Shown piece after piece: positions 13,829 through 58,409 of a stretch of DNA of 64,000 bases (its first letter is position 1; every line of letters begins with the position of its first letter). The position numbers and the translations under genes are program-made. A model generated the notes under the pieces. It was not told where the DNA came from. It did no database searches and saw only the letters and a list, made by a program, of their open reading frames with translations. The DNA is taken from IMG/VR virus record IMGVR_UViG_3300042889_001503, positions 1 to 64,000 of that record; one strand, 5' to 3'.

Positions 13829-16800
13829 ATGGGATTTGATAGTAGAAAAAAATCGGGTAATATAATCGGGGGGTCAAGACTTAATGTTATTGGTCAGGGG
13901 ATTTATAATGTGAAAATTATCCCACCTGGATTTACTAAGCGTTTACCTGCGTATGCCGATGCTGGTGGAAACCCACCAAGTCAAACACCAAGTAACACTC
14001 CAACTCAAACTCCAACACTATCAATAACCCCATCAAATACGCCAACACCTACATATACTCCAACACCAACTCAAACTGCAACACCATTATATTGTGATTT
14101 TAGTTATTATGTTAACGCAATCACTCCAACTCCAACATCAACATCATTAGCGTGTGATTTCACATATGAAGTCGAATTATTTACAAATACCCCAACACCA
14201 ACCCCAACACCAACTCCAACACAAACAATAACACAAACACCAACACAAACTGAGACGCCAACACAAACACCAACACAAACTGAGACGCCAACACAAACTC
14301 CAACACCAACACAAACTGAGACGCCAACACAAACCCCAACACAAACCCCAACATCCTCTCCATTACCACCAACAGTTGAGTATTTCCAAGATTGTTGTGA
14401 TAGTCTTACCGTATATAAAGTTGGTGGTGTATCAACCCCTATTATTGTTGGTAACACTTATTACATCAACACTGATGGATTTAGTGGTTGTGGGACTGCG
14501 GTAAGTGGTCCACCATATAATAGTCAATCTTTAATTATTAGTGTTACATCATACTCAAATTGTGTTCTGTGTGAGGTAGACAATCCTTGCCCAACACCAA
14601 CACCAACACCAACAATGACAGTAACACCAACAAATACTCAAACCCCAACGGTTACACAAACACCGACGGTTACTCAAACACCAACTAATACACCAACAAA
14701 TACTCAAACCCCAACTAATACACTTACACCTACACCTACTCCAACAGTTTGTATTCCACAAATGATATATAGTGGTGAAAAATTTATTAATATACCACTT
14801 CATACTAGTGCGTCTTTCAAACCGGATGGTACGATATTATATATTGCAATTCATAATGGTTCACCAACTGATAGTGTATGTGCTTATTCATTATCAACAC
14901 CGTGGGATGTTTCAACAATTACATTACCACTAATAGGATGTTCAATTGCTGTTCCGGTAATTTCCGGATTAACCCCTACTAGTGTAATTGGTCATCATTT
15001 TTCACCGGACGGTAGTAAATTATTTGTAGTTGAGACAGCATCAAAAAGTGTCCTTAGATATATATTATCAACATCGTGGGATGTTACAACATCTAGTTAT
15101 TCACCCGGTGACTTATTTACTATAGTTGGTTTAACTCCGTCACATATTGATTTTACCCCTGACGGTTTATTTATGTTTGTTACTGTTACGGGTAGCCTTC
15201 TTAAAAAATATAGTTTAACCACACCTTGGGTTATAAATACGGGGGTTGTGGAAATTCAATCAATTTCCAACTCAATTGTTTCCGATTTTACTTTTCAAAA
15301 TAGTGGAACTTATTTGTTTTCAATAGTATCAGGTCCAAGTATAAGAAGACAAACACTATCTACACCGTATGATTTAACTTCAATTGTTCCTGTTTTAACT
15401 CAGACAGAAAATGTAAGTAGTTTTATTTCAGGAGGTAATCTTTATTCTCTTAATTTTAAAGATGGTTATAAAGGGTTTATTGGTGGTTATTACTCAACCG
15501 GTTTGAACGGAATTACAGCTTTTAATCTTACCTGTGAATACGATATTAGCGGGACTTTAATATTACCAACACCTACTCCAACACCAACTCAGACGGTTAC
15601 ACCAACCAATACAGTTACTCCAACACCAACATTACCACCATCGTTTGTTTCAGTATGGAGAACAACAACACCATCTGAAAGTATTACATTACCATATTCA
15701 CCATCAGGAACATATAGTGGAACAATAGATTGGGGCGACGGTAGTATATCCGCTAACACATATGCAAATAGAACACACACATACTCATTATCAGGTAATT
15801 CTACTGTTACAATTTATGGAACAACTAATGGTTGGGCGTTTGGTAATACTGGTGACATATTAAAAATTAGAGAAGTTTTAAAATGGGGACCATTAAAAAT
15901 TAGTAATGGTGCTCAAGTTTTTAGAGGATGTAGTAATTTAGTATTAACCGGTGTTACGGACACTATTGATTTAACAAGTGTTAATAATTTAATTTATATG
16001 TTTGGAGGTTGTTCATCTCTTACAACCATCAACAACGTTAATAGTTGGAATGTTTCAGGAATTACCGTTATGAGTAATATGTTTCAATCATCAACTTTTG
16101 ACGATGATATAAGTTCTTGGAGTGTTTCAAATGTTACAGATATGAATCGTATGTTCCAATTTGGAGCATTTAACCATAATATAAATTCGTGGAATGTTTC
16201 AGGGGTTACAAGTATGGAAAATATGTTTAGACAATCTTCTTTTAATCAACCATTATCAGGTTGGAATGTTTCAAAGGTTACATCTACTATGGCAGGTATG
16301 TTTGATGGAACCTTATTTAACCAAGATATAAGTATGTGGAATGTTTCAGGGGTTACAAGTATGAGTGGTATGTTTAGATACACCCCATTTAATTATTCTC
16401 TTAATAATTGGAATGTTTCAAAGGTAACAAATATGTCTAATATGTTTTATGGTGCGTCATTTAATTTACCATTATCAGGCTGGAATGTTTCAAAGGTTAC
16501 AAATATGAATTCTATGTTCGCATCAACTTCACAATTTAACCAAAACATTAATTCGTGGAATGTTTCAGGTGTTACAGATATGGGTTCTATGTTTTATCAA
16601 AACGCATATTTTAACCAACCATTATCCGGATGGAGTGTGTCAAACGTTAGAAATATGTCTTTTATGTTTTACAATTCACCATTTAATTATCCTATTGGTA
16701 ATTGGGATGTTTTAAATGTTACAGGAATGACATCTATGTTCCAAAGTTCATCATTTAACCAAGACATCGGAAATTGGAATATATCGGGAGTAACCAATTT

Positions 16801-17017
16801 CACTGATTTTATGTTTGCAAAAACACCGATTACATTCTCAACAATAAATTTAGATTCTATTTATAATGGATGGCAAACCAAAACACCGCAAACCGGATTA
16901 ACAATTAATTTTGGTTCTGCAAAATACACATTAGCGAGTCAACCGGGTAAAGATATACTAACAGGTTCAACTATGAGCGGTGGATATGGTTGGACAATAA
17001 CAGATGGGGGGATATAA
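13829..17017 (+). CDS. large surface/fibre protein: Pro/Thr linkers, Cys-rich module, beta-propeller-like repeats, DUF285/BspA-like repeats
   Basis: (PT)n tracts; F.PDG..L(Y/F)....Y.LSTPWDV repeats; IDWGDG; FNQPLSGWNVS.VT.M..MF repeats. Confidence 0.85.
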   Translation: MGFDSRKKSGNIIGGSRLNVIGQGIYNVKIIPPGFTKRLPAYADAGGNPPSQTPSNTPTQTPTLSITPSNTPTPTYTPTPTQTATPLYCDFSYYVNAITPTPTSTSLACDFTYEVELFTNTPTPTPTPTPTQTITQTPTQTETPTQTPTQTETPTQTPTPTQTETPTQTPTQTPTSSPLPPTVEYFQDCCDSLTVYKVGGVSTPIIVGNTYYINTDGFSGCGTAVSGPPYNSQSLIISVTSYSNCVLCEVDNPCPTPTPTPTMTVTPTNTQTPTVTQTPTVTQTPTNTPTNTQTPTNTLTPTPTPTVCIPQMIYSGEKFINIPLHTSASFKPDGTILYIAIHNGSPTDSVCAYSLSTPWDVSTITLPLIGCSIAVPVISGLTPTSVIGHHFSPDGSKLFVVETASKSVLRYILSTSWDVTTSSYSPGDLFTIVGLTPSHIDFTPDGLFMFVTVTGSLLKKYSLTTPWVINTGVVEIQSISNSIVSDFTFQNSGTYLFSIVSGPSIRRQTLSTPYDLTSIVPVLTQTENVSSFISGGNLYSLNFKDGYKGFIGGYYSTGLNGITAFNLTCEYDISGTLILPTPTPTPTQTVTPTNTVTPTPTLPPSFVSVWRTTTPSESITLPYSPSGTYSGTIDWGDGSISANTYANRTHTYSLSGNSTVTIYGTTNGWAFGNTGDILKIREVLKWGPLKISNGAQVFRGCSNLVLTGVTDTIDLTSVNNLIYMFGGCSSLTTINNVNSWNVSGITVMSNMFQSSTFDDDISSWSVSNVTDMNRMFQFGAFNHNINSWNVSGVTSMENMFRQSSFNQPLSGWNVSKVTSTMAGMFDGTLFNQDISMWNVSGVTSMSGMFRYTPFNYSLNNWNVSKVTNMSNMFYGASFNLPLSGWNVSKVTNMNSMFASTSQFNQNINSWNVSGVTDMGSMFYQNAYFNQPLSGWSVSNVRNMSFMFYNSPFNYPIGNWDVLNVTGMTSMFQSSSFNQDIGNWNISGVTNFTDFMFAKTPITFSTINLDSIYNGWQTKTPQTGLTINFGSAKYTLASQPGKDILTGSTMSGGYGWTITDGGI

Positions 17018-17020
17018 TAT

Positions 17021-19432
17021 ATGGGAACAATTTTAAAAATATTATCAATAAATTACGACGGACAATTCGCCGACATTACCTTTTACCCTTGTTCGGGTGG
17101 GAGTATTAATATCGGTGAAGTTAACTTACCATATAATTATTATTCGGAAAATTACTACGGAACATATAACATTTATTTACTTGATTCGGGTAAAACTTGT
17201 TTGTTAAATGTTCCTTGTTTAACACCTACGCCTACTCCAACAACAACAATGACATTAACTCCAACAAATACTCCAACACCAACAAACACACCCGCACCAA
17301 ATTGTGATTTATTAGGTTTAGATATTACAACCCCAACCCCAACTCCAACACCTACAATGACACCAACACCAAGTTCTACACCATTATTACCATTTATATC
17401 TGTGTGGAGAACAACATCTCCGTCTGAGAGTATAACATTACCTTATTACGGTTTAGATTATTCAGGAACCATTGATTGGGGTGATGGAAATTTTTCGGCG
17501 AATACATTTGCAAATAGGACACATATTTATACAACTCCTGATGACTATGTAATAACTATTACAGGTAAAGTTAATGTGTGGTCGTTTTATTATACACCAA
17601 CAAGTAAACTTAAAATAAGAGAAATAACACAGTGGGGATGTCTTAACATAACTCAACTATCATATAATTTTTATGAGTGTTCTAATTTAATATTAACAGG
17701 TGTTACTGACACTCTAAATTTATCTCAAGTGACAAATTTAACATATATATTTCGTGGATGTTCGTCTATTACAACCATAAATAATATTAATAATTGGGAT
17801 GTTTCTAACATTACAGGTATGTCAGGAATGTTTGGTCAAAGTAATTTTAACGATAACATTAATAATTGGGATGTTTCGGGAGTTGAGGATATGAGTTATA
17901 TGTTCCAAGGAGCAACATCTTTCAACGAACCATTATCTGGTTGGACTGTTTCAGGTGTTACAAATATGTCGAATATGTTCCAAGGAACAACATCTTTCAA
18001 CCAACCATTATCAGGTTGGAACGTTTCAAATGTTGCGTCTATGACATATATGTTCCAAAATTCACAATTTAATCAAGATATTAATAATTGGGATGTTTCA
18101 AGTGTTATTTATATGAATTATATGTTTAACGGCACACCGTTTAATCAACCGTTGTCAGGTTGGAATGTTTCAAATGTTACAAGTACGTATTATATGTTTG
18201 CTAGCACCCCATTCAATCAACCAATCGGAAATTGGGATGTCTCAAAAGTGGTTAATATGGAGGGTATGTTCCAAAACGCAACATCCTTCAACCAACCAAT
18301 TAATAATTGGAATGTTTCAGGAGTTACCAATATGACATCAATACTCCAAAGCACTGATTTCAACCTACCATTATCCGGATGGAATGTTTCAAATGTCTAT
18401 AATATGACTTTTATGTTTGCCAATTCACCATTCAATCAACCAATTGGGAATTGGAATGTTTCGGGTGTTACAAATATGGTAGGTATGTTCCAAGGAGCAA
18501 CATCGTTCAATCAACCATTATCCGGATGGAATGTAAGTAACGTTAATAGTATGAGGCAAATGTTTAATACTGCTACCGACTTTAACCAACCTATTGGGTC
18601 TTGGAATGTTTCGGGGGTTACAGATTTGGGTTATATGTTTTATGCGTCATCATTTGACTATCCATTATCTGGGTGGAATGTTTCAAAAGTTACAGATATG
18701 ACTTATATGTTTGCCAATTCCCCATTCAATCAACCAATCGGAAATTGGGATGTCTCAAAAGTTAAAAATATGTCAGGTATGTTTGTCAATACATCATTTG
18801 ATTATCCGATTGGGAATTGGACTGTTTCAGGGGTAACAAATATGAGTAATATGTTTCAAAACGACCAATATTTTAATCAACCATTATCTGGATGGAACGT
18901 CTCAAATGTTGTTGATATGACATCTATGTTCCGAAATTCACAATTTAATCAAGATATTAATAATTGGGATGTTTCAAGTGTTATTTATATGAATTATATG
19001 TTCGCATCTTCCCTATTTAATCAACCATTATCCGGATGGAATGTTTCAAATGTTGGTGATATGAACAATATGTTTTATAATTCGGAGTTCAATTACCCTA
19101 TTGGAAATTGGGATGTATCTAATGTTGTTAATATGAACAATATGTTTAATATTAATACATATTTTAACCAAGATATTGGAAATTGGAGTATATCAAATGT
19201 AACTAATTTTACTGACTTTATGTTAGGTAAAACACCATTAACATTCTCAACAACAAATTTAGATTCAATCTATAGTGGATGGTCAACTAAAAATCCGTAT
19301 ACAGGAAGAACAATAAATTTTGGAAGTGCTAACTACACAATATCCGGAGGACAACCAGGTAAAAATACATTAACGGGTTCAACTATGAGTGGAGGATATG
19401 GTTGGACAATAACTGATGGAGGAGGAATTTAA
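17021..19432 (+). CDS. DUF285/BspA-like repeat surface protein with shared N-terminal module
   Basis: Roughly 20 repeats of about 25 aa (FNQP(L/I)..W(N/D)VS.VT.M..MF); IDWGDG; PT linker. Confidence 0.88.
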   Translation: MGTILKILSINYDGQFADITFYPCSGGSINIGEVNLPYNYYSENYYGTYNIYLLDSGKTCLLNVPCLTPTPTPTTTMTLTPTNTPTPTNTPAPNCDLLGLDITTPTPTPTPTMTPTPSSTPLLPFISVWRTTSPSESITLPYYGLDYSGTIDWGDGNFSANTFANRTHIYTTPDDYVITITGKVNVWSFYYTPTSKLKIREITQWGCLNITQLSYNFYECSNLILTGVTDTLNLSQVTNLTYIFRGCSSITTINNINNWDVSNITGMSGMFGQSNFNDNINNWDVSGVEDMSYMFQGATSFNEPLSGWTVSGVTNMSNMFQGTTSFNQPLSGWNVSNVASMTYMFQNSQFNQDINNWDVSSVIYMNYMFNGTPFNQPLSGWNVSNVTSTYYMFASTPFNQPIGNWDVSKVVNMEGMFQNATSFNQPINNWNVSGVTNMTSILQSTDFNLPLSGWNVSNVYNMTFMFANSPFNQPIGNWNVSGVTNMVGMFQGATSFNQPLSGWNVSNVNSMRQMFNTATDFNQPIGSWNVSGVTDLGYMFYASSFDYPLSGWNVSKVTDMTYMFANSPFNQPIGNWDVSKVKNMSGMFVNTSFDYPIGNWTVSGVTNMSNMFQNDQYFNQPLSGWNVSNVVDMTSMFRNSQFNQDINNWDVSSVIYMNYMFASSLFNQPLSGWNVSNVGDMNNMFYNSEFNYPIGNWDVSNVVNMNNMFNINTYFNQDIGNWSISNVTNFTDFMLGKTPLTFSTTNLDSIYSGWSTKNPYTGRTINFGSANYTISGGQPGKNTLTGSTMSGGYGWTITDGGGI

Positions 19433-19436
19433 TATT

Positions 19437-21650
19437 ATGAAAACTTTTGAAATATTTACAACAAATTACGACGGGTATATCGGAGATATAAGTTATTCCG
19501 CATATACCGGAGGAACTATTAGTTTAGGTTCACAGTTATTACCATACGATTATAATACAGATTATTATTATGGAACATATACCGTATACATACCTTTTTA
19601 TAATAAAACCTGTATTTTAGATTATCCGCCACCTTCTTGGGATTTAATCGGTGATACGTTAATATTGTTCATTTCAAGTTGGAAAACCGACAATGAAGGT
19701 TTTACTAACACTAATCAAATTGGTATTGTGTTAGACCCATCAGGAACTTTTAATTTTGTAATTGATTGGGGTGATGGAAATACAGACACAATAACATCAT
19801 ATAGTCAACCTGAGCTTATACATACTTACAATGTTATAGGAACATATACTATACGTATGTTTGGAGTAATTGACGGGTTTAATATAGGAAATTATGCTGG
19901 TGATTATGGTAAAATTTTAAGTGTTCAACAGTGGGGTGATGTAAAATTAATTGATGGTGGATATCAATTTTATTATTGTTTTAATTTAGATTTATCTACC
20001 GTAATCGATACTTTAGACACTTCAAATCTGACTAATATCGACGCTATGTTTGCAGAATGTTATAGTTTAACATCTGTAAATAATATACAATCGTGGGACA
20101 TTTCTAATATAACAAGTTTATCTTATTTATTCTCCGGATGTATATTATTTAATCAAAACTTAAATAATTGGGATATTTCGGGAATTACAAATATAAGTGG
20201 AATGTTTTATTTGACAAGTTATAATCAACCATTATCCGGGTGGAATGTTTCAAATGTTCAATACACAAATTATATGTTTAGTAATTCTCAATTTAATCAA
20301 CCATTATCCGGATGGGATGTTTCAAATGTTGTTGATATGAGTAATATGTTTGAGTCTTGTCCATTTAACCAACCAATCAATAATTGGAATGTTTCAGGTG
20401 TTACAAATATGGGTTATATGTTTAATGGGTCATCATTTAATCAACCATTATCCGGATGGGATGTTTCAAATGTTACAGATATGAGTTATATGTTCTATAA
20501 CAACTCAATATTTAATCAACCTATTGAAAATTGGAATGTTTCAAATGTTACAAATATGAGTGGTATGTTCTATTACAACTCAGCATTTAACCATCCAATT
20601 GGGAATTGGAATGTTTCGGGTGTTACCAATATGAGTTATATGTTCTATTACAACTCAACATTTAACCATCCAATTGGGGATTGGAATGTTTCGGGTGTTA
20701 CCAATATGTCGGGTATGTTCTCTAATAATCAAATATTTAATCAACCATTATCCGGGTGGAACGTCTCAAATGTTACCAATATGTCGAATATGTTCTATTC
20801 CAACTCAACATTTAATCAACCATTATCAAGTTGGACTGTTAGTAATGTAACAAATATGTCAGGTATGTTTTATAATAATAGAATATTTAACCAACAAATT
20901 GATAATTGGGATGTATCTAAAGTTACAAATATGAGTTATATGTTTTTTAACAGTTTATTTGACCAACCATTATCCGGATGGAATGTTTCTAAAGTTACTC
21001 TTATGTTTTCCATGTTTAATAATTCTCAATTTAATCAAAATATAAATAATTGGAATGTTTCTGGAGTTACAAATATGAGTGATATGTTCTCTAATAATCA
21101 AATATTTAATCAACCATTATCCGGGTGGAATGTTTCAAAGGTTACAAGTATGAGTAATATGTTTGCCACTTCATCATTCAATCAACCAATTAATAATTGG
21201 AATGTGTCGGGTGTCACAGATATGGGTGCGATGTTCTATCAATCTCAATTTAATCAACCATTATCCGGGTGGAATGTTTCAAATGTTATTAGTTTGTTTA
21301 ATATGTTTAGGGGTTCAAAATTTAATCAACCTATTGGAAATTGGGATATTTCTAAAGTATCTAATGTTGTGTATATGTTTTATGAAAACCAATATTTTAA
21401 ACAAAATTTAGGGAATTGGAACATATCAGGTGTTACAAATTTTTATTATTTTATGGGAACTAAAAACCCTATTACTTTTTTCACATACAATTTAGATAGT
21501 ATTTATAATGGGTGGGTAACAAAAAACCCACAAATAGGGATACAGATTAATTTTGGTAGTGCAAAATACACATCAGCTGGTTTGGCGGCAAGGACAACCC
21601 TTGTAACAACTTATTTTTGGTCAATTAGCGACGGAGGAATGTTAACTTAA
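19437..21650 (+). CDS. DUF285/BspA-like repeat surface protein with shared N-terminal module (start MKTFEIF)
   Basis: Same repeat type; the ATG at 19437 follows the upstream stop and aligns with the paralog N-termini. Confidence 0.88.
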   Translation: MKTFEIFTTNYDGYIGDISYSAYTGGTISLGSQLLPYDYNTDYYYGTYTVYIPFYNKTCILDYPPPSWDLIGDTLILFISSWKTDNEGFTNTNQIGIVLDPSGTFNFVIDWGDGNTDTITSYSQPELIHTYNVIGTYTIRMFGVIDGFNIGNYAGDYGKILSVQQWGDVKLIDGGYQFYYCFNLDLSTVIDTLDTSNLTNIDAMFAECYSLTSVNNIQSWDISNITSLSYLFSGCILFNQNLNNWDISGITNISGMFYLTSYNQPLSGWNVSNVQYTNYMFSNSQFNQPLSGWDVSNVVDMSNMFESCPFNQPINNWNVSGVTNMGYMFNGSSFNQPLSGWDVSNVTDMSYMFYNNSIFNQPIENWNVSNVTNMSGMFYYNSAFNHPIGNWNVSGVTNMSYMFYYNSTFNHPIGDWNVSGVTNMSGMFSNNQIFNQPLSGWNVSNVTNMSNMFYSNSTFNQPLSSWTVSNVTNMSGMFYNNRIFNQQIDNWDVSKVTNMSYMFFNSLFDQPLSGWNVSKVTLMFSMFNNSQFNQNINNWNVSGVTNMSDMFSNNQIFNQPLSGWNVSKVTSMSNMFATSSFNQPINNWNVSGVTDMGAMFYQSQFNQPLSGWNVSNVISLFNMFRGSKFNQPIGNWDISKVSNVVYMFYENQYFKQNLGNWNISGVTNFYYFMGTKNPITFFTYNLDSIYNGWVTKNPQIGIQINFGSAKYTSAGLAARTTLVTTYFWSISDGGMLT

Positions 21651-21653
21651 TTT

Positions 21654-21863: not shown

Positions 21864-21883
21864 TTTATACGAACTAACAATAT

Positions 21884-25006: not shown

Positions 25007-25070
25007 AACAGATACTTATTAGAACAAAGTAAACTATTTATATAAGGAAAATTATATTTAAATTTAGAAT

Positions 25071-26957: not shown

Positions 26958-26979
26958 ATATTTATAAATAAAAAAACTT

Positions 26980-28452: not shown

Positions 28453-28475
28453 TATTTATAAATAAAACATTCAAA

Positions 28476-45352: not shown

Positions 45353-45359
45353 ATTGTTC

Positions 45360-46415: not shown

Positions 46416-46416
46416 A

Positions 46417-46695
46417 TTATATTTTATTTAGTAAGTTTTTATAAAGTAGCGTGTTAAACGCAATTTTAAATGGTATTGATAAATTGTTAGTACCCTTTGC
46501 ACCTAATTGTTCATCAATCTCTTCCGGTTCGTCCATAATTATTTCCATCATTAATTTAACCGTTTCATATTTAATTATACTAATGTGGGTTGATTCTGTA
46601 ATACCTGAGGTAACAACTTTATCCCCTTTAATTTGAACGTAGTCATCTATTTTGTCTAAATCCAAATAATAATTTTCACCTAATACTTTTAACAT
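46417..46695 (-). CDS. hypothetical protein
   Basis: ORF within the operon. Confidence 0.7.
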   Translation of the reverse strand: MLKVLGENYYLDLDKIDDYVQIKGDKVVTSGITESTHISIIKYETVKLMMEIIMDEPEEIDEQLGAKGTNNLSIPFKIAFNTLLYKNLLNKI

Positions 46696-48036: not shown

Positions 48037-48043
48037 TTTTTAA

Positions 48044-51833: not shown

Positions 51834-52167
51834 CTTTATATAATTTTACCGAATCCTCAATTAATGATTTACCTTGACTTATTGAATTATCAACCATCCG
51901 ATTTATTGCCTCAACATATTTAGGTCGTTTACTTTTAAAACAGATGTCAATTTTTTTCTTTAACACAGCAATTTCAGAGTCGGTTTTAGCATCACTAATG
52001 GCGTCTTCTAAATACCACATTCTACAATGTAATATGGATAATTTTTCAATCACCTCACCTAAATTATCGGTTTCAATGATATCATCAGGTAATTCAACAT
52101 TTTTATTTTTAGTTAAAATTTCTAATGTTTTATTTTTAATTATTTCTTCAATTTTTTCACCTATCAT
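51823..52167 (-). CDS. hypothetical protein, DUF4254-like
   Basis: LGEVIEKLSIL..RMWYLED. Confidence 0.45.
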   Translation of the reverse strand: MIGEKIEEIIKNKTLEILTKNKNVELPDDIIETDNLGEVIEKLSILHCRMWYLEDAISDAKTDSEIAVLKKKIDICFKSKRPKYVEAINRMVDNSISQGKSLIEDSVKLYKGVE

Positions 52168-52169
52168 AA

Positions 52170-53039
52170 TTATTTAATTTTTAAATTTATTTCATTTTGT
52201 ATTGTTGTTATCATATTAGGATAATTTAAATTATTTGACCATAAATTTTTATTTTTACCATCATAATAAAATATACCTTCAGATTCATTAAATGTGAATG
52301 AAATGAATGTTTTTTTATCGTCATTAAAATTTTCTTTAGTATGTGTAAAACAAAATGGTCCGGAAGCCCTTCCTACAATAATATCACAATGATTTGAAAT
52401 TAGACTAATTTGTAATAAATCAGGTAATGATTCTGTTATTTGTGGATATGTTGTAATAACATTAGAATTATTTTCATATAATTGATTAGTACTTAAAAAT
52501 AAACAATTAGGGTTATTTTCAGACAAATTTTCAACAATAGGTGTGAAACTAAAATTATGTGATTGACTTGAATTTACATTACCGTCACAAACTAAAATAA
52601 TTAAATCATATTTTAGTTTTAATTCTTTTATTTTGTTTACAATATTATCATGCGATTTTAAATTAGTATTAATCACAGAGGGTAAATACTTATTAAAATC
52701 ATTATCTAATTCAATATTATAGAAATCACAAATATCGGTAACTAATTTAAAATGATTAATAAATGAACAACCAGGAATAGGTTGGTGTGATACATAAATC
52801 ATTTGTTTTTGTCCTATCCAAGTATTCACAATATTATTTTCTAAATTTGTGTTGTGAATATCATAATTTCCGGGGATACCCACAATTTCATTAACTTCAG
52901 GTAAATCTTCAAATAATGGTGATTGTAGATTATGATAGTATGTAATGTTATAATGGTTTTTTAAAATATTAATTAATATTCTTGAGTAAAATATATCACC
53001 ATTGTGGAAATGATTATATAATGTTATATTGTTTTTCAT
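52170..53039 (-). CDS. putative glycosyltransferase (GT-B-like)
   Basis: HNGD N-terminal motif; CDIIVGRASGP; start taken as MKNNITLY. Confidence 0.55.
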   Translation of the reverse strand: MKNNITLYNHFHNGDIFYSRILINILKNHYNITYYHNLQSPLFEDLPEVNEIVGIPGNYDIHNTNLENNIVNTWIGQKQMIYVSHQPIPGCSFINHFKLVTDICDFYNIELDNDFNKYLPSVINTNLKSHDNIVNKIKELKLKYDLIILVCDGNVNSSQSHNFSFTPIVENLSENNPNCLFLSTNQLYENNSNVITTYPQITESLPDLLQISLISNHCDIIVGRASGPFCFTHTKENFNDDKKTFISFTFNESEGIFYYDGKNKNLWSNNLNYPNMITTIQNEINLKIK

Positions 53040-53043
53040 ATTA

Positions 53044-53817
53044 TTAACTATAATGTATGTGTTTATCCATATATTTAAAATTTTCATTTAAATTATTTAA
53101 TAATGAAAAAGTTGATACGTTACTTCTACTTACTAATTTAAAATCAGTTAATGATAATAAAATAGAATCAACAATAACTTCTTCGGCTAATTTAGATTTA
53201 TTTGGTAGATTTGAAAAATGTAAACCAACATTAGAATCACCCCTTCTTGATTCAGTATAAATTAAAGTATCACCTAATTCTTTTTTAAAAAAATTCAAAG
53301 AATTATTATCATCAGTCATTAAATAAATTTTATCATAACTGTTATGTTTAAATTCTTCATTAATATTTGACAAAATAATTTCATCAGATAATAATGCTCC
53401 GTGAGTACTATGGTCTGTACCTCTTTTTTGAACACCTAAAGTTTTTAACCCTTTAAAATAATTTTTATCAATATTGTTAAAAAAAATATTATCCATTAAT
53501 TTTAAATCAATCAATGTTTGAGAGGGGGTTTTTAAATTTTTTAAAATAGTTAATTCATCAAGTCCATTTCCAATAGCTTCAGGGAAATAATACCCATAAG
53601 GGGTTAAATTAATAAATGTTGACGTAATTGGTTCAATATCATAAACTTGTTTAAAAAATTTATCATATAGATTTTCGTTAGATAAATCACTATACATATA
53701 ATTAAACCATTCAACATTAAATTTTTGATTATTATCGTTAAAATACATTATACCCGCTAATAATGTTAAAAAATCCGAAAAAAAACCTTCGTTTCGGTTT
53801 ATTATTAATTTATTCAT
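53044..53817 (-). CDS. NodZ/FUT-like GDP-sugar (fucosyl/colitosyl) transferase
   Basis: EGFFS, LGVQKRGTD, IYLMTDD, D..LLS.TD....SNVS. Confidence 0.7.
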   Translation of the reverse strand: MNKLIINRNEGFFSDFLTLLAGIMYFNDNNQKFNVEWFNYMYSDLSNENLYDKFFKQVYDIEPITSTFINLTPYGYYFPEAIGNGLDELTILKNLKTPSQTLIDLKLMDNIFFNNIDKNYFKGLKTLGVQKRGTDHSTHGALLSDEIILSNINEEFKHNSYDKIYLMTDDNNSLNFFKKELGDTLIYTESRRGDSNVGLHFSNLPNKSKLAEEVIVDSILLSLTDFKLVSRSNVSTFSLLNNLNENFKYMDKHIHYS

Positions 53818-53823
53818 ATTTTA

Positions 53824-54501
53824 TTATAAATTTTTATTTAATTCAAAATTTATTGATTTTCTTTTTAGATATAAATTTTTATCAATATAATCATTTTTAG
53901 AATTTTCTAAATGTATATTGTCTCGACCACCGAATCCAACATCAGGATGTTCATGTTTAATTATTAGTTCATTAAAATAAGTTTGTTTATTTAATAAGTT
54001 TGCAACATCCATAAATTCGTTATCCGCCCATAAAGATTTATATTCTGGATGATAAATGTAATTAAACCTCTCATAATATTTTTTACCTAAAATACATAAA
54101 GTATTCAATCTATTACCTTGATAACCATCATTAAACCATAAAACACCATCAGTATCCGGATATTTTTCTTTCATTTTTTTTCTAATGATTGTATCGTAAC
54201 CTTTAACTTTTGGTATCATATCATCAGATGCTAATAAGACAATATCCCAATCATTTTCGGTTTCCATATCTCTATTTATGGCTTCGATTTTTGATTTACT
54301 TTCACCATAAATGTATGATAAGTTTTTGTATTCTTTAAACATCTCAATAACACCCGGTTGATTCATAACTTTATCATCAGTGTCTAATGTTACTAAAAAT
54401 TTAATATTATCTAAATCATCACACATTGTGTAATACATTTTTAAAACATTAAAGAATTTAAATGTTCGTCCTCTAGTAGGAAACTTAATTAAAATTTTCA
54501 T
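53824..54501 (-). CDS. glycosyltransferase, GT-A fold
   Basis: KFPTRGR, LASDDM, WADNE, IKHEH. Confidence 0.7.
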   Translation of the reverse strand: MKILIKFPTRGRTFKFFNVLKMYYTMCDDLDNIKFLVTLDTDDKVMNQPGVIEMFKEYKNLSYIYGESKSKIEAINRDMETENDWDIVLLASDDMIPKVKGYDTIIRKKMKEKYPDTDGVLWFNDGYQGNRLNTLCILGKKYYERFNYIYHPEYKSLWADNEFMDVANLLNKQTYFNELIIKHEHPDVGFGGRDNIHLENSKNDYIDKNLYLKRKSINFELNKNL

Positions 54502-55882
54502 TCTTAAAATTTTTGTTCATTATTTTATTATACAACTCTTGTTGGTTGTTATTCGCCTCTGTTGATACGGTTCCGTCACTTTCGTGGTGAAAATATACAA
54601 AAAGAGGTTTTGGTATTCTTTTCCCCGAATATCCCTTCAATCCCATTCTAATCCATAAATCATAATCTTCCCATCCTTTCAATGTAACATCATACCCGTC
54701 ACAAACATCAAACGCTTCTTTATGAAACATTGAACAATTAACTATAAACGGACCTTCTCTTAATCTTTCTATAGACCATTCAGGTCTTTTTTCGATTCCT
54801 TGTATTTGACCTATATGATGTGTATCACAATAAACCGGACTAATGGTTTTATTGTTTTTTAAAATGTTAACACAGAATTGAATATAATCCGGATGAATAG
54901 TGTCATCACCATCTAATGGTAGTATAAAAATACCATTTGAATTTTTAACCCCATTATTTCTTGCTGAAGATGGTCCTTGATTTTCTTGATATATGATTTT
55001 AATATTTGGATGGTCTTTAATACTCTCTAATTTTAATTTAACGTAAGTATCGGTTGACCCGTCATCAACAATTACTATCTCTACATTTTTATAGGTAGAA
55101 TCAAATACTGATTGTAACGATTTTTCGAATTGTAACCCATAATTGTAAATCGGAATTATAACAGAAACTAACGGTAACTTTGGATTAATTTTATTTATCG
55201 GGTATTTTGATTCTAATTTAATAGGTAATTTTTCTTTGTATTTTTCTAAAAATAATAATCTATTCTGTTCCCACTGATTATTGGTCATACCAATAGAAAG
55301 ATGTGTTAACGGGACATTTGAAATTGTTCCAACTTTAACTCCGGATAAATGATTACTCATACAAAATGATGTATCATAAAAATGGAATCCGGTAAATGAT
55401 TCATCAAAATTAGTTTTTAAATTACTTTTTTTAACGGCAAAGAAAACACCATCAACAATAACGGAATCTATTATTTTTGACCCAAATGGTTTATTATATT
55501 CAGATAACCATTTTTTACCTTCGTGCTGATGATAAACTTGACCAATCATCTCACCCTGTATGTCCCACCATCTTCCGGAATTAGGGTAATATGATGTTCC
55601 AGCAACACCTAAAATACCGTATTCAGGTTTTTTGGTAAAATGTTCTAAAACTCGTTTACCCCAATATTCTTTTTCAAAAATGATATCATTATGACAAAAC
55701 ACAATAATATCATTAACTGATTCGTTTAATCCTTTGTTATAAACTTCAGTTAAACTAAATTGGTTATGGTTAACATACTCCAATATTTGAACATTTTTTA
55801 AACCAACAGTTTGTAACAAATGTTGTCTAAATTTGTTATTATATTGTTCGTCTTTATGTGTTGAATAAATTACTGTTATCAT
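54485..55882 (-). CDS. two-domain glycosyltransferase (GT2-like plus GT2)
   Basis: YNKG..FCHNDI..GVAG..VDGVF..FHFYD; second domain VSVIIPIYN, VDDGSTD, ARNNG, LDGDD, EDYDLW. Confidence 0.88.
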   Translation of the reverse strand: MITVIYSTHKDEQYNNKFRQHLLQTVGLKNVQILEYVNHNQFSLTEVYNKGLNESVNDIIVFCHNDIIFEKEYWGKRVLEHFTKKPEYGILGVAGTSYYPNSGRWWDIQGEMIGQVYHQHEGKKWLSEYNKPFGSKIIDSVIVDGVFFAVKKSNLKTNFDESFTGFHFYDTSFCMSNHLSGVKVGTISNVPLTHLSIGMTNNQWEQNRLLFLEKYKEKLPIKLESKYPINKINPKLPLVSVIIPIYNYGLQFEKSLQSVFDSTYKNVEIVIVDDGSTDTYVKLKLESIKDHPNIKIIYQENQGPSSARNNGVKNSNGIFILPLDGDDTIHPDYIQFCVNILKNNKTISPVYCDTHHIGQIQGIEKRPEWSIERLREGPFIVNCSMFHKEAFDVCDGYDVTLKGWEDYDLWIRMGLKGYSGKRIPKPLFVYFHHESDGTVSTEANNNQQELYNKIMNKNFKNENFN

Positions 55883-56484
55883 ACTAATCCTGTTGAACCA
55901 AATCCGTTTTCACCCCGTTCTTTTTTATTTATTTTCTCAACTTGATTTAATCCTACCCAAGCACCGTTTACAACGGGACAAAGAACCGCTTGTCCGAATT
56001 TCATACCTTTTGGTATTCTAACCTCAGTTGGGTTTGTATTAAAGATGATTCCTTTAACTTCTCCGGTGTAACCATTATCCACGGTTCCCGGTGAATTTAA
56101 AACCATAAGTCCTTGGTTGATTGCCAACCCACTTTTTGTTCTAACTTGTATCTCAAAACCGTCTTTAATGTCGAAACATAGTCCACTAGGAACTAACGCT
56201 CTACCAAACGGTGGGATAACAACATCCTCAACAGAATGTAAGTCAAACCCCGAATCACTATCGTAGTTATATTTTGGGTGAACAGCATCCGGGTGAAGTA
56301 TCTCATAAGGTAAATCTAATTTAGTTGCCCCCTCGGCAATATCTTTTTCAATTTGTTCTAAATCAATATCCATTTCTTTCAAAATGTCATCGTAATCCAC
56401 CTCACCTGTTTCGGATGAGAATGTCTCTTGTAAATTAAGTAATTTTTTTCTTAAATTTTCTAACTCTTCAAAATTGTCTAACAT
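55879..56484 (-). CDS. dut: dUTPase with acidic N-terminal extension
   Basis: SGFDL, RTKSGLA, NSPGTVDNGYTGE, RGENGFGSTG. Confidence 0.92.
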   Translation of the reverse strand: MLDNFEELENLRKKLLNLQETFSSETGEVDYDDILKEMDIDLEQIEKDIAEGATKLDLPYEILHPDAVHPKYNYDSDSGFDLHSVEDVVIPPFGRALVPSGLCFDIKDGFEIQVRTKSGLAINQGLMVLNSPGTVDNGYTGEVKGIIFNTNPTEVRIPKGMKFGQAVLCPVVNGAWVGLNQVEKINKKERGENGFGSTGLV

Positions 56485-57185
56485 TATTCTAATTCTTTTA
56501 ATTTTTTTATTACGTCAATTAGTACAAGTACGTCTCGTTCACAGTAAGCGGTGATTTCAGGTAACATATTTTTGTTCCAATATGCGTCGTGAACTTTATC
56601 TCCGGTAACATCACCTTCCTTTGGTGATGGAACATCCATACAAGTACACATTAAGTCTAACGAACCAATTGCCGTATATGCTCCGTATTGCCAAATTTCT
56701 TTGGTATCGATAGCTTTAATCTCCCACGGTTTTGTGTCGTAAGATGGTAAAAGTGTTGGAGGCATTAATCCGTTGATAATCATTCGTTTTGCCAACATAG
56801 GGATATCAAAATTCTTAAGATTGTGTCCACATAGATAAAAATCTAATTTACCACAACGATTAAGTAATGTTTGACATTCTTTTAATAGAACCTTTTCATC
56901 ATCACCTGAAAACGATTGTTTTTTAATATCACCATTGTCCATAACAAAGGCAACACTAACACAAACAATTTTTGCAAACTCAGGAACTAATGCGGCTCTT
57001 TTTTCAAAAACTTTATCGGCAGAAAATCCGGCATCTTCAGGAAATCGTTTTTGGAACCAATCAAAATATTTCTCAAATTGACTCGCAACATTAGGATTGT
57101 TAACTTTACACTCGGTATAGTTTTTACATCCACCAACAGTTTCTATATCAAGAAACAATATTTTGGTTAAAGGTATTTTTATCAT
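56484..57185 (-). CDS. 3'-5' exonuclease (PolB exo-like, DEDDy)
   Basis: FLDIETV, GHNLKNFDIP, YCERDV. Confidence 0.85.
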   Translation of the reverse strand: MIKIPLTKILFLDIETVGGCKNYTECKVNNPNVASQFEKYFDWFQKRFPEDAGFSADKVFEKRAALVPEFAKIVCVSVAFVMDNGDIKKQSFSGDDEKVLLKECQTLLNRCGKLDFYLCGHNLKNFDIPMLAKRMIINGLMPPTLLPSYDTKPWEIKAIDTKEIWQYGAYTAIGSLDLMCTCMDVPSPKEGDVTGDKVHDAYWNKNMLPEITAYCERDVLVLIDVIKKLKELE

Positions 57186-57188
57186 TTT

Positions 57189-58409
57189 TTATTTTATTAA
57201 AGATTTGTAAAATTCTGCTCTATTTTTTGTAACCACGTTAAGGTCGTATTTGTCTTTTACTGTATTATATAATCTTTCACCCAATACTTTAATCATTTCA
57301 GGGTTCTGAACTAATTTCTTAATTGCTTTAGACCAATCACTATGATTTCTACTTTCAGGGATTAAAATAGCGTTACCCTCTTCGTTAAATTCACCATTTT
57401 TCAAACAGTGAACTAAATCGATTGTGTATGGTCCAATTTCAGACGCGATTAAAGCTTTCTTATAAAACCCTGCCTCAATAACTTTTAATTGAGATTTCAT
57501 TCTGTTGAAGATGTGATTTTTAATCGGAGCCAAAGATATATCAAATTTTGAATAATTCATAGCGTAAGTTGTGACAGGTTTTGTCCAAACTCTAACATAA
57601 GGTAAAACATTTCCGGAATTATATTCACCTTCTTTAAATTGTTGTAAGAATTTTTTATAGTCATCATCAACTGTTTGATAATTGGTTGTAAAAATTTCCT
57701 CATAACGAGCCCATACAGTTTCGTGTGGTTTAATTTCTCGTTGTTTTTCTTCACCTGTTTGAGGATTTATTTCAGTTACAGTTCCTCTTGTATCAAAACC
57801 ACAAATCACATATTGTAATTTATCGTTAATGTCACTATTTTTTTGAACAAACCCCCCAAGTAATTCTAAATCGTGTAAGTGAGATGAGCCACCTAACCAC
57901 CCAACTCTAATTTTATCAGAAGGAGGTGTTGGTTGATTAAACTGTAATTCTTTTGGGTTAATGGCGTTTGGAAATACAATAACGTTTTTGTTTAATTTTT
58001 TGATTTCCTCAGCAAATATATCAGTAGTGGTGGTTACATAACTTGCCGCTCTCAGATTATTTTTAATTTTCTCATCAATTTTGTGTTTAACAATAATACT
58101 ATGTATTGGATGCTCAACCGTTGGTAACCAATAATCATCTAAATCGACAATAACGATAATACCCATTGACTTTAACCATTGGATTAATTGAGGGGCGATA
58201 TTATAATCTTGTCCAATTGTTCTGTGAGCATGAATTATCTGATATTTTTTCCAATATTCAATATTATTTATTTGAGGTTCGTAGTCAATATCTACGTGGA
58301 AGTCATCCGGATATAAGTTTTGTAAGAATACGTGAGGGTCAACAGAGCGAAATTTACCAACACCTGTTTTGTCACTTGGTAGAACTAATACATTAATTTT
58401 TTCTTTCAT
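57189..58409 (-). CDS. glycosyltransferase, GT-B (GT4-like)
   Basis: DLDDYW, GWLGGSSH..DL, DISLAP, FNRMKSQLKVIEAG, IAS. Confidence 0.8.
   Translation of the reverse strand: MKEKINVLVLPSDKTGVGKFRSVDPHVFLQNLYPDDFHVDIDYEPQINNIEYWKKYQIIHAHRTIGQDYNIAPQLIQWLKSMGIIVIVDLDDYWLPTVEHPIHSIIVKHKIDEKIKNNLRAASYVTTTTDIFAEEIKKLNKNVIVFPNAINPKELQFNQPTPPSDKIRVGWLGGSSHLHDLELLGGFVQKNSDINDKLQYVICGFDTRGTVTEINPQTGEEKQREIKPHETVWARYEEIFTTNYQTVDDDYKKFLQQFKEGEYNSGNVLPYVRVWTKPVTTYAMNYSKFDISLAPIKNHIFNRMKSQLKVIEAGFYKKALIASEIGPYTIDLVHCLKNGEFNEEGNAILIPESRNHSDWSKAIKKLVQNPEMIKVLGERLYNTVKDKYDLNVVTKNRAEFYKSLIK

What the first reader, a model, noticed from the sequence alone, without database searches (positions are those of the whole stretch)
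13829..58409. Putative phage-encoded virion O-glycosylation system: sugar pathway, transferases and mucin-like virion proteins
Seen in sequence: 44540-58409 encodes gmd, an fcl/colC-like gene, a colD-like gene, an epimerase, a NodZ-like GDP-sugar transferase and about six other glycosyltransferases. They are co-oriented with, and directly upstream of, the gp55-like sigma and baseplate genes. No Wzx/Wzy, ABC exporter or obvious membrane-anchored enzyme is visible, which argues against host LPS/capsule conversion. The same window encodes virion-type proteins with very long Thr/Pro mucin-like tracts (13829, 17021, 21884, 61216). Established: Pro/Thr tracts are classic O-glycosylation targets, and some viruses (chloroviruses, some actinophages) glycosylate capsids with their own enzymes. 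Inference: the phage builds a deoxy-sugar glycan coat on its own particle.
Basis: partly seen in the sequence, partly recalled or inferred. Interest (0 to 1): 0.82.

Follow-up and report, generated by a model that had tools for sequence, protein, structure and literature searches.

The report
Phage glycan gene block beside mucin-like proteins
An uncultured freshwater jumbo phage carries membrane-free sugar-building enzymes with a swappable deoxy-sugar cassette, next to late genes for proteins with long Thr/Pro tracts; whether the glycan ends up on the virus particle is plausible but unproven.

Summary
Window 43791-58409 (- strand) encodes GMD, a ColD-type 3-dehydratase with its diagnostic catalytic His, an Fcl/ColC-like reductase, a short SDR and seven glycosyltransferase proteins (eight GT domains). 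These are interleaved with dUTPase, an exonuclease and PhoH, and the block ends at a probable gp55-like sigma gene. Five late-strand proteins carry long Thr/Pro tracts, mostly with DUF285 repeats.

Comparison with over 300 related loci adds three points:
- Four GTs are conserved across the lineage, while the sugar genes sit in a recombination hot spot (2.8-12.8 kb, 131 protein families in 76 loci) with no multi-pass membrane protein.
- The PT/DUF285 genes between terminase and portal are a separate insertion. Four contigs have the colitose cassette without them, so the two are not co-inherited.
- A second PT/DUF285 gene family (61216) is a lineage-wide neighbour of the GT block.

The block has its own terminator and sigma-70-like promoter and lacks the late-promoter motif. 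DNA glycosylation is unlikely: GATC occurs 0 times against 187 expected, and no ThyA-like enzyme lies nearby.

Virion-protein glycosylation is the best reading (about 0.4). The published alternative, remodelling of host surface polysaccharide, is not excluded (about 0.3).

The parts
57189..58409 (-). Core GT, 406 aa; GT-B/GT4 'RfaG-like' family found only in phages. First gene of the block.
   Evidence: phrog_7162 3e-42. Atlas look-alikes are 100% viral GT1/GT4 clusters. 64-100% identical in relatives.
58410..58521 (-). Boundary of the transcription unit: hairpin plus U-run after the upstream late genes, then TTGATA-17-TATATT before the first GT.
   Evidence: The hairpin is kept with different stem sequences in relatives L297, L301 and L313.
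56484..57185 (-). 3'-5' exonuclease (PolB-exo-like); conserved.
   Evidence: PF10108 6.7e-14.
55879..56484 (-). Trimeric dUTPase / dCTP-deaminase-like protein; conserved.
   Evidence: PF00692 2e-20. No similarity to T4 gp56.
54485..55882 (-). Two-domain GT-A enzyme, present across the lineage but only about 42% identical. It forms the edge of the variable cassette.
   Evidence: PF13712 1.3e-29 and PF00535 9.2e-33. Best PDB match is chondroitin polymerase 2z86, 9.4e-33.
53824..54501 (-). Cassette GT, 225 aa.
   Evidence: phrog_14945 7.8e-21. Found in 21 of 76 loci.
53044..53817 (-). Cassette protein resembling NodZ/FUT8/protein-O-FucT; a candidate fucosyl- or colitosyl-transferase.
   Evidence: Pfam NodZ 4.7e-5, below cut-off. 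Atlas look-alikes at score 0.95-0.97.
52170..53087 (-). Cassette protein with a GT9-like GT-B fold. It lies in the 21.7% G+C stretch.
   Evidence: Atlas structure TM 0.69 to a Bacteroidota GT9 protein. Composition.
51823..52167 (-). Cassette protein of 114 aa, function unknown (weak DUF4254 match). It travels with the SDR and ColD genes.
   Evidence: 22 loci.
51054..51833 (-). Short SDR, probably a sugar-nucleotide reductase.
   Evidence: PF16363 1.4e-9. YxxxK at residue 111; no GxxGxxG.
49913..51064 (-). ColD-type GDP-4-keto-6-deoxymannose 3-dehydratase.
   Evidence: PDB 2gms 2.6e-66, with the catalytic His aligned.
49014..49916 (-). GDP-fucose synthase / ColC-like epimerase-reductase.
   Evidence: PDB 4e5y 8.7e-96. 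NF047922 247 bits, below its 500-bit cut-off.
48044..49033 (-). GDP-mannose 4,6-dehydratase.
   Evidence: PF16363 1.3e-116. TIGR01472 399 bits.
47275..48036 (-). PhoH-like ATPase; the conserved anchor on the other side of the cassette.
   Evidence: PF02562 9.9e-60. Used as anchor for the 80 loci.
46417..47291 (-). Two conserved genes of unknown function (198 and 92 aa).
   Evidence: Conserved in all PhoH-anchored loci. No family hit.
45360..46415 (-). Core GT, 351 aa, GT-B/GT4-like.
   Evidence: Model pLDDT 86. Foldseek 8xsg 5.2e-13, TM 0.71. 49-100% identical in relatives. No homologue in 50,697 GenBank phage records.
44540..45352 (-). Core GT, 270 aa, GT-A/GT2.
   Evidence: PF00535 2.1e-7, 31.5 bits against a 23.3-bit cut-off. 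Conserved.
43791..44540 (-). Probable gp55-like late sigma factor; last gene of the block.
   Evidence: phrog_234 4.5e-4. hhalign to T4 gp55 gives 41 columns, 32% identity, E 0.0068, over the same region.
13829..17017 (+). Late protein of 1062 aa: PT tracts, a beta-propeller-like middle part and DUF285 repeats.
   Evidence: PF03382 3.7e-127. Tracts at residues 119-182, 255-306 and 578-604.
17021..19432 (+). Late protein of 803 aa: N-terminal beta-sandwich adapter, PT tracts, DUF285 repeats.
   Evidence: PF03382 5.7e-240. Adapter model pLDDT 86, six strands.
19416..21650 (+). Paralogue of 744 aa: the same adapter and DUF285 repeats, but no PT tract.
21884..25006 (+). Late protein of 1040 aa: adapter, about 418 residues of T/P/Q tracts, Cys-rich modules and a C-terminal Hint-like domain.
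   Evidence: Hint-like domain matches PDB 6y75/6tmm at 3e-6.
61161..61215 (.). Divergent intergenic region carrying the late-promoter-like motif GTATTTAT in both directions.
   Evidence: Conserved in relatives whose flanking protein is only 46-61% identical.
61216..64000 (+). First 928 codons of a 1971-1979 aa PT/DUF285 protein. This gene family is the lineage-wide neighbour of the GT block.

Best explanation
The window comes from an abundant, uncultured T4-related freshwater jumbo phage (contig of 272 kb). It encodes a wholly cytoplasmic glycan assembly line.

**Shown**
- A pre-late transcription unit (58409 to 43791) holds four lineage-conserved glycosyltransferases.
- Between dUTPase and PhoH lies a recombination hot spot. 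Here it carries GMD, a ColD-type 3-dehydratase, an Fcl/ColC-like reductase, a short SDR and three to four more transferases.
- By homology this cassette should yield GDP-colitose and/or GDP-fucose.
- Relatives hold other cassettes at the same site, with methyl- and acetyl-transferases and GT6/10/11/31/47/92 enzymes.

**Inferred**
- These enzymes build a branched, strain-specific glycan directly on phage-made late proteins in the cytoplasm, before or during assembly.
- The likeliest acceptors are the Thr-rich tracts that link a small beta-sandwich adapter to distal DUF285 repeat domains in fibre-like appendage proteins.
- The conserved GTs would start and extend the inner glycan, and the swappable cassette would set the outer sugars.
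- The acceptor, the attachment of these proteins to the virion and the benefit of the glycan are all inference.
For: - Every enzyme is soluble. No initiating phosphotransferase, flippase, polymerase, ligase or ABC exporter occurs in the window or among 131 cassette families from 76 loci.
- The PT proteins have no signal peptide or membrane span, so only cytoplasmic enzymes could modify them before lysis.
- The PT proteins lie on the late strand. 13829 and 21884 have near-matches to the late motif, and 61216 shares the divergent late-promoter region.
- The 61216-family PT/DUF285 gene and the GT block are neighbours in 32 of 37 related loci, and nearly all have PT tracts in that gene or the next.
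- The adapter, PT linker and variable distal domain recur at two structural loci, which is the layout of modular virion appendages.
- DUF285 proteins are packaged in a giant virus particle (PMC7507832).
- Mycobacteriophage virions are glycosylated by phage GTs (summarised in PMC12619734).
- Global DNA modification, a main rival, is disfavoured by extreme restriction-site avoidance.
Against: - Four contigs have the GMD/ColD/Fcl cassette but no PT gene between terminase and portal, and most relatives lack that insertion.
- Two loci (L313, L314) keep the GTs although their 61216 homologue and its neighbours have no PT tract.
- The GT block sits with dUTPase, exonuclease, PhoH and the sigma gene behind a sigma-70-like promoter. 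It is not in a structural operon, unlike the mycobacteriophage case.
- No GT can be assigned as a protein O-transferase. The GT-B model matches small-molecule, lipid and protein GTs alike, and these are the same PDB entries that top the lists for phage DNA GTs (PMC13326640).
- PT tracts also serve as plain linkers.
- No experimental datum exists for this lineage.
Confidence: 0.4

Rival explanations
1. Remodelling of the host surface. The soluble phage GTs act at the inner face of the host membrane on the host's own lipid-linked O-antigen or capsule intermediates. The host machinery then exports the altered polysaccharide. This would block superinfection or stop progeny adsorbing to debris. It is the published reading of similar jumbo-phage clusters.
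For: - Iyer et al. 2021 (PMC7824862) describe polymorphic sugar/GT clusters in jumbo phages (SDR paralogues, PfkB kinases, nucleotidyltransferases, at least eight GT families) and assign them this role. All these features are met here.
- Colitose and fucose are classical O-antigen sugars (established knowledge).
- O-antigen GTs are themselves soluble.
- The two-domain GT resembles capsule polymerases (2z86 and heparosan synthase).
- The block is pre-late, as expected for a takeover function.
Against: - None of 131 cassette families is a multi-pass membrane protein. Export of at least 40 length variants of the cassette would therefore depend on host flippases and polymerases, which are usually specific for their glycan.
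- Known surface conversion by phages uses one to three genes and belongs to temperate phages (established knowledge).
- This reading does not explain the conserved adjacency to PT-rich late genes.
Confidence: 0.3
2. The glycan is made, but the PT tracts are not the acceptor. They would be plain spacers, and the target would be another phage protein (for example the 623-aa capsid protein), a host protein, or a free or lipid-bound glycan.
For: - The core GTs are lineage-wide, whereas the PT genes at terminase-portal are confined to the window's nearer kin (portal at least about 80% identical).
- L313 and L314 keep the GTs without PT tracts at the second locus.
- One paralogue (19416) has the adapter and DUF285 repeats but no PT tract.
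Against: - PT tracts are otherwise pervasive next to the GT block.
- No other Ser/Thr-rich acceptor was seen in the conserved head proteins of the window.
Confidence: 0.2
3. DNA hypermodification. The GTs would glycosylate a modified base in phage DNA against restriction, as in T4 and in RB69/DLP3, which also encode sugar-nucleotide pathways and several GT4-like enzymes.
For: - The phage has a T4-like head module.
- In T4, a-gt lies just upstream of gene 55.
- The GTs are GT-B/GT4-like and phage-specific.
- The neighbours are nucleotide-metabolism genes, and the block is pre-late.
- Cassette diversity would suit an arms race.
- A precedent exists in PMC13326640.
Against: - GATC occurs 0 times against 187 expected, CATG 11 against 170, GCGC 3 against 17 and GGCC 7 against 28. 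Among relatives that all carry the GT block the purge is all-or-none (GATC absent in 13 of 21 diverse loci). A T4 control shows 37 against 95. The DNA is therefore exposed to type II restriction.
- No ThyA-like enzyme, T4 a-GT or b-GT, or gp56 homologue occurs in the window or in 4.3 Mb of related loci, although such pathways are usually clustered.
- Eight GT domains, plus methyl- and acetyl-transferases in relatives, exceed any known DNA glycan.
- Only about 70 of 272 kb were seen.
Confidence: 0.05

Closest known systems
Polymorphic sugar/GT clusters of jumbo phages and cyanophages (P-SSM2 type; Iyer et al. 2021, PMC7824862)
   Same: - Several SDR dehydratase/epimerase paralogues and many GT families.
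- Sugar kinases and nucleotidyltransferases occur in relatives.
- Content differs between close relatives.
- No experimental function is known.
   Different: - A different, uncultured lineage, probably with Bacteroidota hosts.
- A ColD-type colitose branch. My literature search found no report of a phage-encoded one.
- Defined anatomy: four fixed GTs plus one hot spot between dUTPase and PhoH.
- Conserved adjacency to PT/DUF285 late genes.
Mycobacteriophage virion glycosylation (Freeman et al. 2023, as cited in PMC12619734)
   Same: Phage-encoded soluble GTs are proposed to modify the phage's own structural proteins in the cytoplasm.
   Different: - In mycobacteriophages, glycans sit at the C-termini of capsid and tail-tube subunits. 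I recall from memory, and did not check, that the GT genes lie in the structural operon.
- Here the block is a separate pre-late unit with a full sugar-nucleotide pathway, and the candidate acceptors are internal Thr/Pro linkers.
Giant-virus particle glycosylation (chlorovirus capsid, mimivirus fibrils)
   Same: From established knowledge: virus-encoded GMD-type pathways, clade-specific glycosylation clusters and glycosylated surface fibrils. DUF285 proteins are packaged in AaV particles (PMC7507832).
   Different: Those are eukaryotic viruses with no homology in their structural proteins. The resemblance is functional only.
E. coli / Yersinia GDP-colitose pathway (ColB-ColD-ColC in O-antigen loci)
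   Same: GMD plus a ColD with His in place of the aminotransferase Lys, plus an Fcl-family reductase, all adjacent and co-oriented.
   Different: No Wzx, Wzy or initiating transferase. The reductase scores best against eukaryote-type GDP-fucose synthases, so its ColC activity is not established.
Phage DNA glycosylation clusters (T4 a-gt/b-gt; RB69/DLP3 arabinosyl-5hoC, PMC13326640)
   Same: T4-like phage, GT4-like enzymes, a phage-encoded sugar-nucleotide supply, and neighbours in nucleotide metabolism.
   Different: No thymidylate-synthase homologue or nucleotide kinase nearby, GDP-sugars rather than UDP-sugars, and extreme restriction-site avoidance.

Membership tests
GDP-colitose biosynthesis (ColB/GMD, ColD, ColC) | GDP-mannose 4,6-dehydratase | tested here: met
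   PF16363 full length, 1.3e-116. TIGR01472 399 bits, just under its 415-bit cut-off.
GDP-colitose biosynthesis (ColB/GMD, ColD, ColC) | PMP-dependent 3-dehydratase with His in place of the Schiff-base Lys | tested here: met
   ColD 2gms 2.6e-66. The query 'GHH' aligns with ColD 'SHH', and the H188N and H188K mutant entries mark the position.
GDP-colitose biosynthesis (ColB/GMD, ColD, ColC) | ColC-type C5 epimerase / C4 reductase acting on the 3-deoxy intermediate | not testable with these tools
   An Fcl-family enzyme is present, but sequence cannot separate Fcl from ColC specificity.
Jumbo-phage polysaccharide-modification clusters (Iyer et al. 2021) | SDR paralogues plus several GT families, polymorphic between related phages | tested here: met
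   Three SDRs and seven GT proteins in the window. 131 families in 76 loci.
Jumbo-phage polysaccharide-modification clusters (Iyer et al. 2021) | The product decorates host outer polysaccharide | not testable with these tools
   This is a proposal in the source paper too.
O-antigen / capsule loci | Initiating polyprenyl-phosphate transferase, Wzx/Wzy or ABC exporter | tested here: not met
   No protein with more than one hydrophobic segment in the window cluster or the pan-cassette. No such Pfam family among the 25 most frequent of the 51 families matched.
Phage virion glycosylation (mycobacteriophage type) | GT genes inside the late structural operon, next to their acceptor genes | tested here: not met
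   The block has its own terminator and promoter and no late motif. It is, however, next to a PT/DUF285 late gene transcribed divergently four to five genes away.
Phage virion glycosylation (mycobacteriophage type) | Glycans detected on virion proteins | not testable with these tools
   The phage is uncultured, and no proteomic data were found.
Phage DNA glycosylation (T4, RB69/DLP3) | Thymidylate-synthase homologue making a hydroxylated pyrimidine, clustered with the GTs | tested here: not met
   phmmer with T4 gp42 against all ORFs of the window and 284 loci found nothing. The rest of the 272-kb genome was not seen.
Phage DNA glycosylation (T4, RB69/DLP3) | Homology to T4 alpha- or beta-glucosyltransferase | tested here: not met
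   hhalign probabilities below 1%.
Phage DNA glycosylation (T4, RB69/DLP3) | DNA shielded from restriction, so no need to purge sites | tested here: not met
   GATC 0 against 187 expected; CATG 11 against 170.
T4 gp55 late sigma factors | Sequence similarity to gp55 | tested here: inconclusive
   phrog_234 4.5e-4. hhalign E 0.0068 with probability 5.6%. No PDB hit with the profile. A conserved T4-like AT-rich late motif supports the idea indirectly.
DUF285 / BspA-like repeat proteins | PF03382 repeats | tested here: met
   3.7e-127, 5.7e-240 and 6.2e-241. Also in the C-terminal part of the 61216 protein, through PHROGs.
Hint / pre-toxin HINT domains | About 150-aa module starting with Cys and ending in His-Asn | tested here: inconclusive
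   phmmer to PDB 6y75/6tmm at 3e-6 over the whole module. Cys890 and the terminal 'THNK' were read directly. No Pfam hit at E 0.01 or better. That the PDB chains are HINT domains is my recollection.

The most novel reading that the evidence does not exclude
A widespread freshwater jumbo-phage lineage coats mucin-like Thr/Pro stalks of its own fibre-like virion proteins with strain-specific glycans. The glycans would be made in the cytoplasm by four fixed transferases plus an exchangeable sugar cassette (here colitose/fucose). This would be a phage counterpart of giant-virus fibril glycosylation, with an O-antigen-like diversity locus acting on the virus particle itself.
Probability: 0.35. Interest if true: 0.8.

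Novelty: new member of a known kind. Interest (0 to 1): 0.55.

Why it matters
Large sugar/GT clusters in jumbo phages and cyanophages have been known for twenty years, yet no target has been shown experimentally.

This lineage offers a clean test bed:
- It is very abundant: more than 599 capsid relatives in IMG/VR, and the exact core GT occurs on 74 contigs.
- The block has a fixed frame with one exchangeable cassette.
- The enzymes are all soluble.
- Candidate acceptor peptides are encoded next door, so co-expression in E. coli could settle protein versus lipid versus DNA targets.

If the particle is the target, phage surfaces would carry hypervariable glycans. That would matter for adsorption, for grazing and decay of virus particles in lakes, and for how phage 'auxiliary metabolic' sugar genes are read in metagenomes.

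Tried and rejected
**Searches that found nothing useful**
- Megablast of the cluster against 50,697 phage records: no match.
- tblastn of two core GTs and two 'baseplate' candidates: no match.
- Pfam and PHROGs on the flanking small genes and large unknowns: nothing usable.
- Profile search of 5.8 billion proteins with the GT-B core enzyme: 4084 relatives, and all 120 listed are unnamed or 'hypothetical', apart from one labelled HEPN-domain.

**Tests that could not discriminate**
- Profile search of the sigma candidate against PDB found no gp55 hit. Only hhalign and PHROGs give weak support.
- Fold search of the GT-B model returns generic GT4 hits. These include the protein O-GTs SdgB and GtfA, and also the entries reported for DNA GTs, so the acceptor cannot be read from the fold.
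- Fold search of the N-terminal adapter gave no significant match. It is an Ig/FN3-like sandwich only by eye.
- The generic promoter/terminator scan was not above shuffles. The boundary was found by comparing relatives instead.
- Metatranscriptome contigs cover the block at 90-95% identity, with a dip at the intergenic boundary. They are unstranded and cannot prove transcription.

**Identity of the lineage**
- Identity with the published 'moraphages' (PMC12619734) could not be verified.

**Rejected**
- A tight cassette-PT gene linkage.
- DNA glycosylation as the main reading.

**Considered but not done**
- Walking the remaining 200 kb of the contig. The step size is too small for the look-up cap.

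Full report
**What the window is**

The window is the first 64 kb of IMG/VR contig 3300042889_001503 (272,437 bp), with the same numbering. It has about 31% G+C and no tRNA.

The + strand carries a T4-type head module:
- terminase at 12039
- portal at 25071
- prohead protease at 28476
- major capsid protein at 31137

No GenBank phage is similar at the DNA level. By capsid and portal protein the nearest records are an uncultured 484-kb phage, Microcystis phage Mel-JY01 and Flavobacterium phage immuto, at 38-45% identity.

The lineage is very common in metagenomes. More than 599 capsid relatives at 73% identity or better were found in IMG/VR. RNA libraries labelled freshwater metagenome hold related contigs. 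It fits the published 'moraphages': freshwater, 200-307 kb, four core GT orthogroups and predicted Bacteroidota hosts (PMC12619734). I could not verify that identity.

**The observation**

- GMD is full length.
- The DegT-family protein is a ColD-type 3-dehydratase, not an aminotransferase. Its best solved relatives are E. coli ColD entries, and the catalytic His188 is conserved.
- The adjacent SDR is an Fcl/ColC-family enzyme.
- A fourth enzyme is a short SDR.
- Seven proteins are glycosyltransferases or have GT folds, giving eight GT domains in all.
- None of these proteins has a membrane span.

The Thr/Pro tracts are real and large. They contain 43-50% Thr, and a single tract reaches 145 residues. 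Three of the four named proteins also carry DUF285 repeats. A fifth paralogue (19416) has the repeats without PT.

Three details need correction:
- The block is interleaved with dUTPase, an exonuclease, PhoH and two unknown genes.
- The 'baseplate' genes have no support.
- The gp55 call is only probable.

**Anatomy from relatives**

I fetched loci anchored on capsid, ColD, PhoH, portal and the 61216 protein and compared them by tblastn and ORF clustering.

*A fixed frame with one hot spot.* The frame runs: GT406, exonuclease, dUTPase, two-domain GT, [cassette], PhoH, two unknowns, GT-B enzyme, GT2 enzyme, sigma candidate. It is conserved throughout the lineage. The interval between dUTPase and PhoH is a hot spot:
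- It spans 2.8-12.8 kb, with 40 different lengths and 131 protein families in 76 loci.
- No family has more than one hydrophobic segment.
- Besides the GMD/ColD/Fcl set, the cassettes encode methyltransferases (Methyltransf_24, TylF, FkbM), acetyltransferases, cytidylyltransferases, UDP-glucose dehydrogenase, a PfkB kinase and GT2, GT6, GT10, GT11, GT31/Fringe, GT47 and GT92 enzymes.
- Only 13 of about 78 informative PhoH-anchored loci have a ColD homologue at 50% identity or better.

*A second insertion site.* The terminase-portal junction is also variable. In most relatives terminase abuts portal. Only the window's nearer kin carry one to four PT/DUF285 genes there.

*No co-inheritance.* Four contigs that span both sites have the colitose-type cassette but no PT gene at that junction. 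The cassette and these PT genes are therefore not inherited together.

*A lineage-wide neighbour.* The 61216 family behaves differently. In 32 of 37 related loci it lies next to the same five small genes and GT406. In nearly all of them the homologue or the next gene carries PT tracts. The exceptions are L313/L314 and one truncated locus.

*A shared adapter.* A small N-terminal domain is shared by 17021, 19416 and 21884. In relatives it is also found in genes next to the 61216 family, and it is usually followed directly by a PT tract. Its model is a confident six-stranded beta sandwich with no significant structural match.

**Transcription units**

A motif (A/G)GTATTTAT(A/C) lies 5-40 nt upstream, in the sense orientation, of the portal, scaffold-region, protease and other + strand genes. 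It also precedes the - strand genes at 38176 and 61160. Near matches occur before 13829, 21884 and 43765.

The motif is conserved upstream of the 61160 gene, and in reverse complement before the 61216 family, in relatives whose proteins are only 46-61% identical. It resembles the T4 late promoter, so I treat it as the late promoter. None lies between 43.8 and 60.3 kb.

Upstream of GT406 there is a hairpin plus U-run and then TTGATA-17-TATATT. In relatives the hairpin is kept with different stem sequences.

The GT block is therefore its own unit. It is probably read by the host sigma factor, together with the nucleotide-metabolism genes and the late sigma gene. The PT/DUF285 genes are late.

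Metatranscriptome contigs of close relatives cover the block, with a dip at this boundary. That is weak, unstranded evidence.

**Which target?**

*DNA.* T4-like phages can encode sugar-nucleotide pathways and several GT4-like enzymes for DNA glycans (PMC13326640). In T4, a-gt lies just upstream of gene 55. Three results argue against this reading here:
- No thymidylate-synthase homologue, a-GT, b-GT or gp56 relative occurs in the window or in 4.3 Mb of related loci.
- The glycan machinery is far more elaborate than any known DNA glycan.
- The window has no GATC at all (187 expected) and 11 CATG (170 expected). Purging among relatives that all carry the GT block is all-or-none.

A genome that purges restriction sites is not shielded by bulky base modification. 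I give this reading 0.05.

*Host surface.* This is the published view for similar clusters (PMC7824862), and it fits the sugars, the polymorphism and the pre-late timing. Against it, there is no membrane component in any cassette, and it does not explain the conserved neighbourhood with PT-rich late genes. I give it 0.3.

*The phage's own proteins.* This reading explains the following:
- the all-soluble machinery
- the signal-peptide-less PT proteins
- their late expression
- their adapter-linker-distal-domain layout
- the lineage-wide adjacency

Precedents exist in mycobacteriophages and giant viruses, and DUF285 proteins are packaged in AaV particles. It remains inference. The acceptor cannot be read from GT folds, and the comparative data show that neither the cassette nor the core GTs depend on any one PT gene. 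I give 0.4 to PT-tract glycosylation and 0.2 to glycosylation of some other target.

**Novelty**

Sugar/GT clusters that differ between related jumbo phages are known, so this is a new member of that kind. Three elements are new here:
- the ColD branch (no report of a phage-encoded one in my search)
- the resolved frame-plus-hot-spot anatomy
- the conserved pairing with mucin-like late proteins

Together these make the target question testable by simple co-expression.

Noticed in passing
window 1-64000; loci L012, L107, L136, L150, L160, L179, L191, L262, L300, L308, L311, L317, L323: Extreme purging of 4-bp palindromes. GATC is 0 observed against 187 expected, CATG 11 against 170, GCGC 3 against 17, GGCC 7 against 28 and GTAC 51 against 137. 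Among relatives the purge is all-or-none and differs by member: GATC is absent in 13 of 21 diverse loci and normal in L040, L061, L062 and L202. This suggests host-specific type II restriction pressure.
   Followed up: partly
window 2381-2392, 7067-7074, 7897-7904, 25035-25042, 26959-26970, 28453-28464, 29562-29569, 33092-33099, 33794-33801, 38206-38217, 61175-61182: A conserved motif (A/G)GTATTTAT(A/C), often TATTTATAAATA, lies 5-40 nt upstream of structural genes in the sense orientation. It is probably the late promoter of this lineage and is absent from 43.8-60.3 kb.
   Followed up: partly
window 24551-25006: The 1040-aa PT-rich protein ends in a 151-aa Hint-like module (first residue Cys890, ending 'THNK'; PDB 6y75/6tmm 3e-6). 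It is conserved at 81-85% in L217 and L219. A terminal Hint could cleave off the upstream PT-rich part or transfer it to another molecule.
   Followed up: partly
window 13809-25070; loci L206-L284: The terminase-portal junction is an insertion hot spot holding 0-4 genes. Many related contigs end just upstream of portal, probably because the PT/DUF285 repeats break assemblies.
   Followed up: yes
window 17021-17215, 19437-19631, 21884-22078; L298:11362-11556, L312:16539-16733, L315:12011-12205: A 62-aa N-terminal beta-sandwich domain (model pLDDT 86) is shared by paralogues at two structural loci and is usually followed at once by a PT tract. It is a candidate virion-attachment adapter with no significant structural match.
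   Followed up: partly
window 52001-54000: G+C falls to 21.7% within the cassette (GT9-like and NodZ-like genes), against about 31% for the window.
   Followed up: no
window 4350-6395 (-): A 681-aa Lon-like ATP-dependent protease (phrog_4871, 1.2e-240) lies alone on the - strand inside the + strand block.
   Followed up: no
window 33104-33784 (+): An HNH / endonuclease VII-like gene lies directly downstream of the major capsid gene and has its own late-type motif.
   Followed up: no
window about 1515-1525 and about 37225-37235: TATCTTTG lies upstream of the genes at 1532 (+) and 37210 (-). It matches the Bacteroidota -7 box TAnnTTTG (recalled from memory), in line with a Bacteroidota host.
   Followed up: no
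window 3224-3871 (+): An endolysin-like protein (phrog_2649, 1.2e-4) also contains a short Thr/Pro linker of 20 residues by my criterion. PT linkers in this phage are therefore not confined to fibre-like proteins.
   Followed up: no
window 46695-47291 (-): The conserved 198-aa protein next to PhoH begins 'MRIAIEINGVL'. This resembles the HAD / 5'(3')-deoxyribonucleotidase DxDGV motif with both Asp residues replaced. The resemblance is from memory, and no family hit was found.
   Followed up: no
L293:13931-14995 (contig 67146-68210, just beyond the window): The gene after the 1971-aa PT/DUF285 protein encodes a 355-aa protein with 94 PT-tract residues. Equivalents in relatives carry 84-163 such residues.
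   Followed up: partly
window 55800-61400: Three runs labelled freshwater metagenome (metatranscriptomic libraries) hold contigs 90-99% identical to the exonuclease, GT406 and the small late genes. Depth dips at the 58418-58604 boundary.
   Followed up: partly
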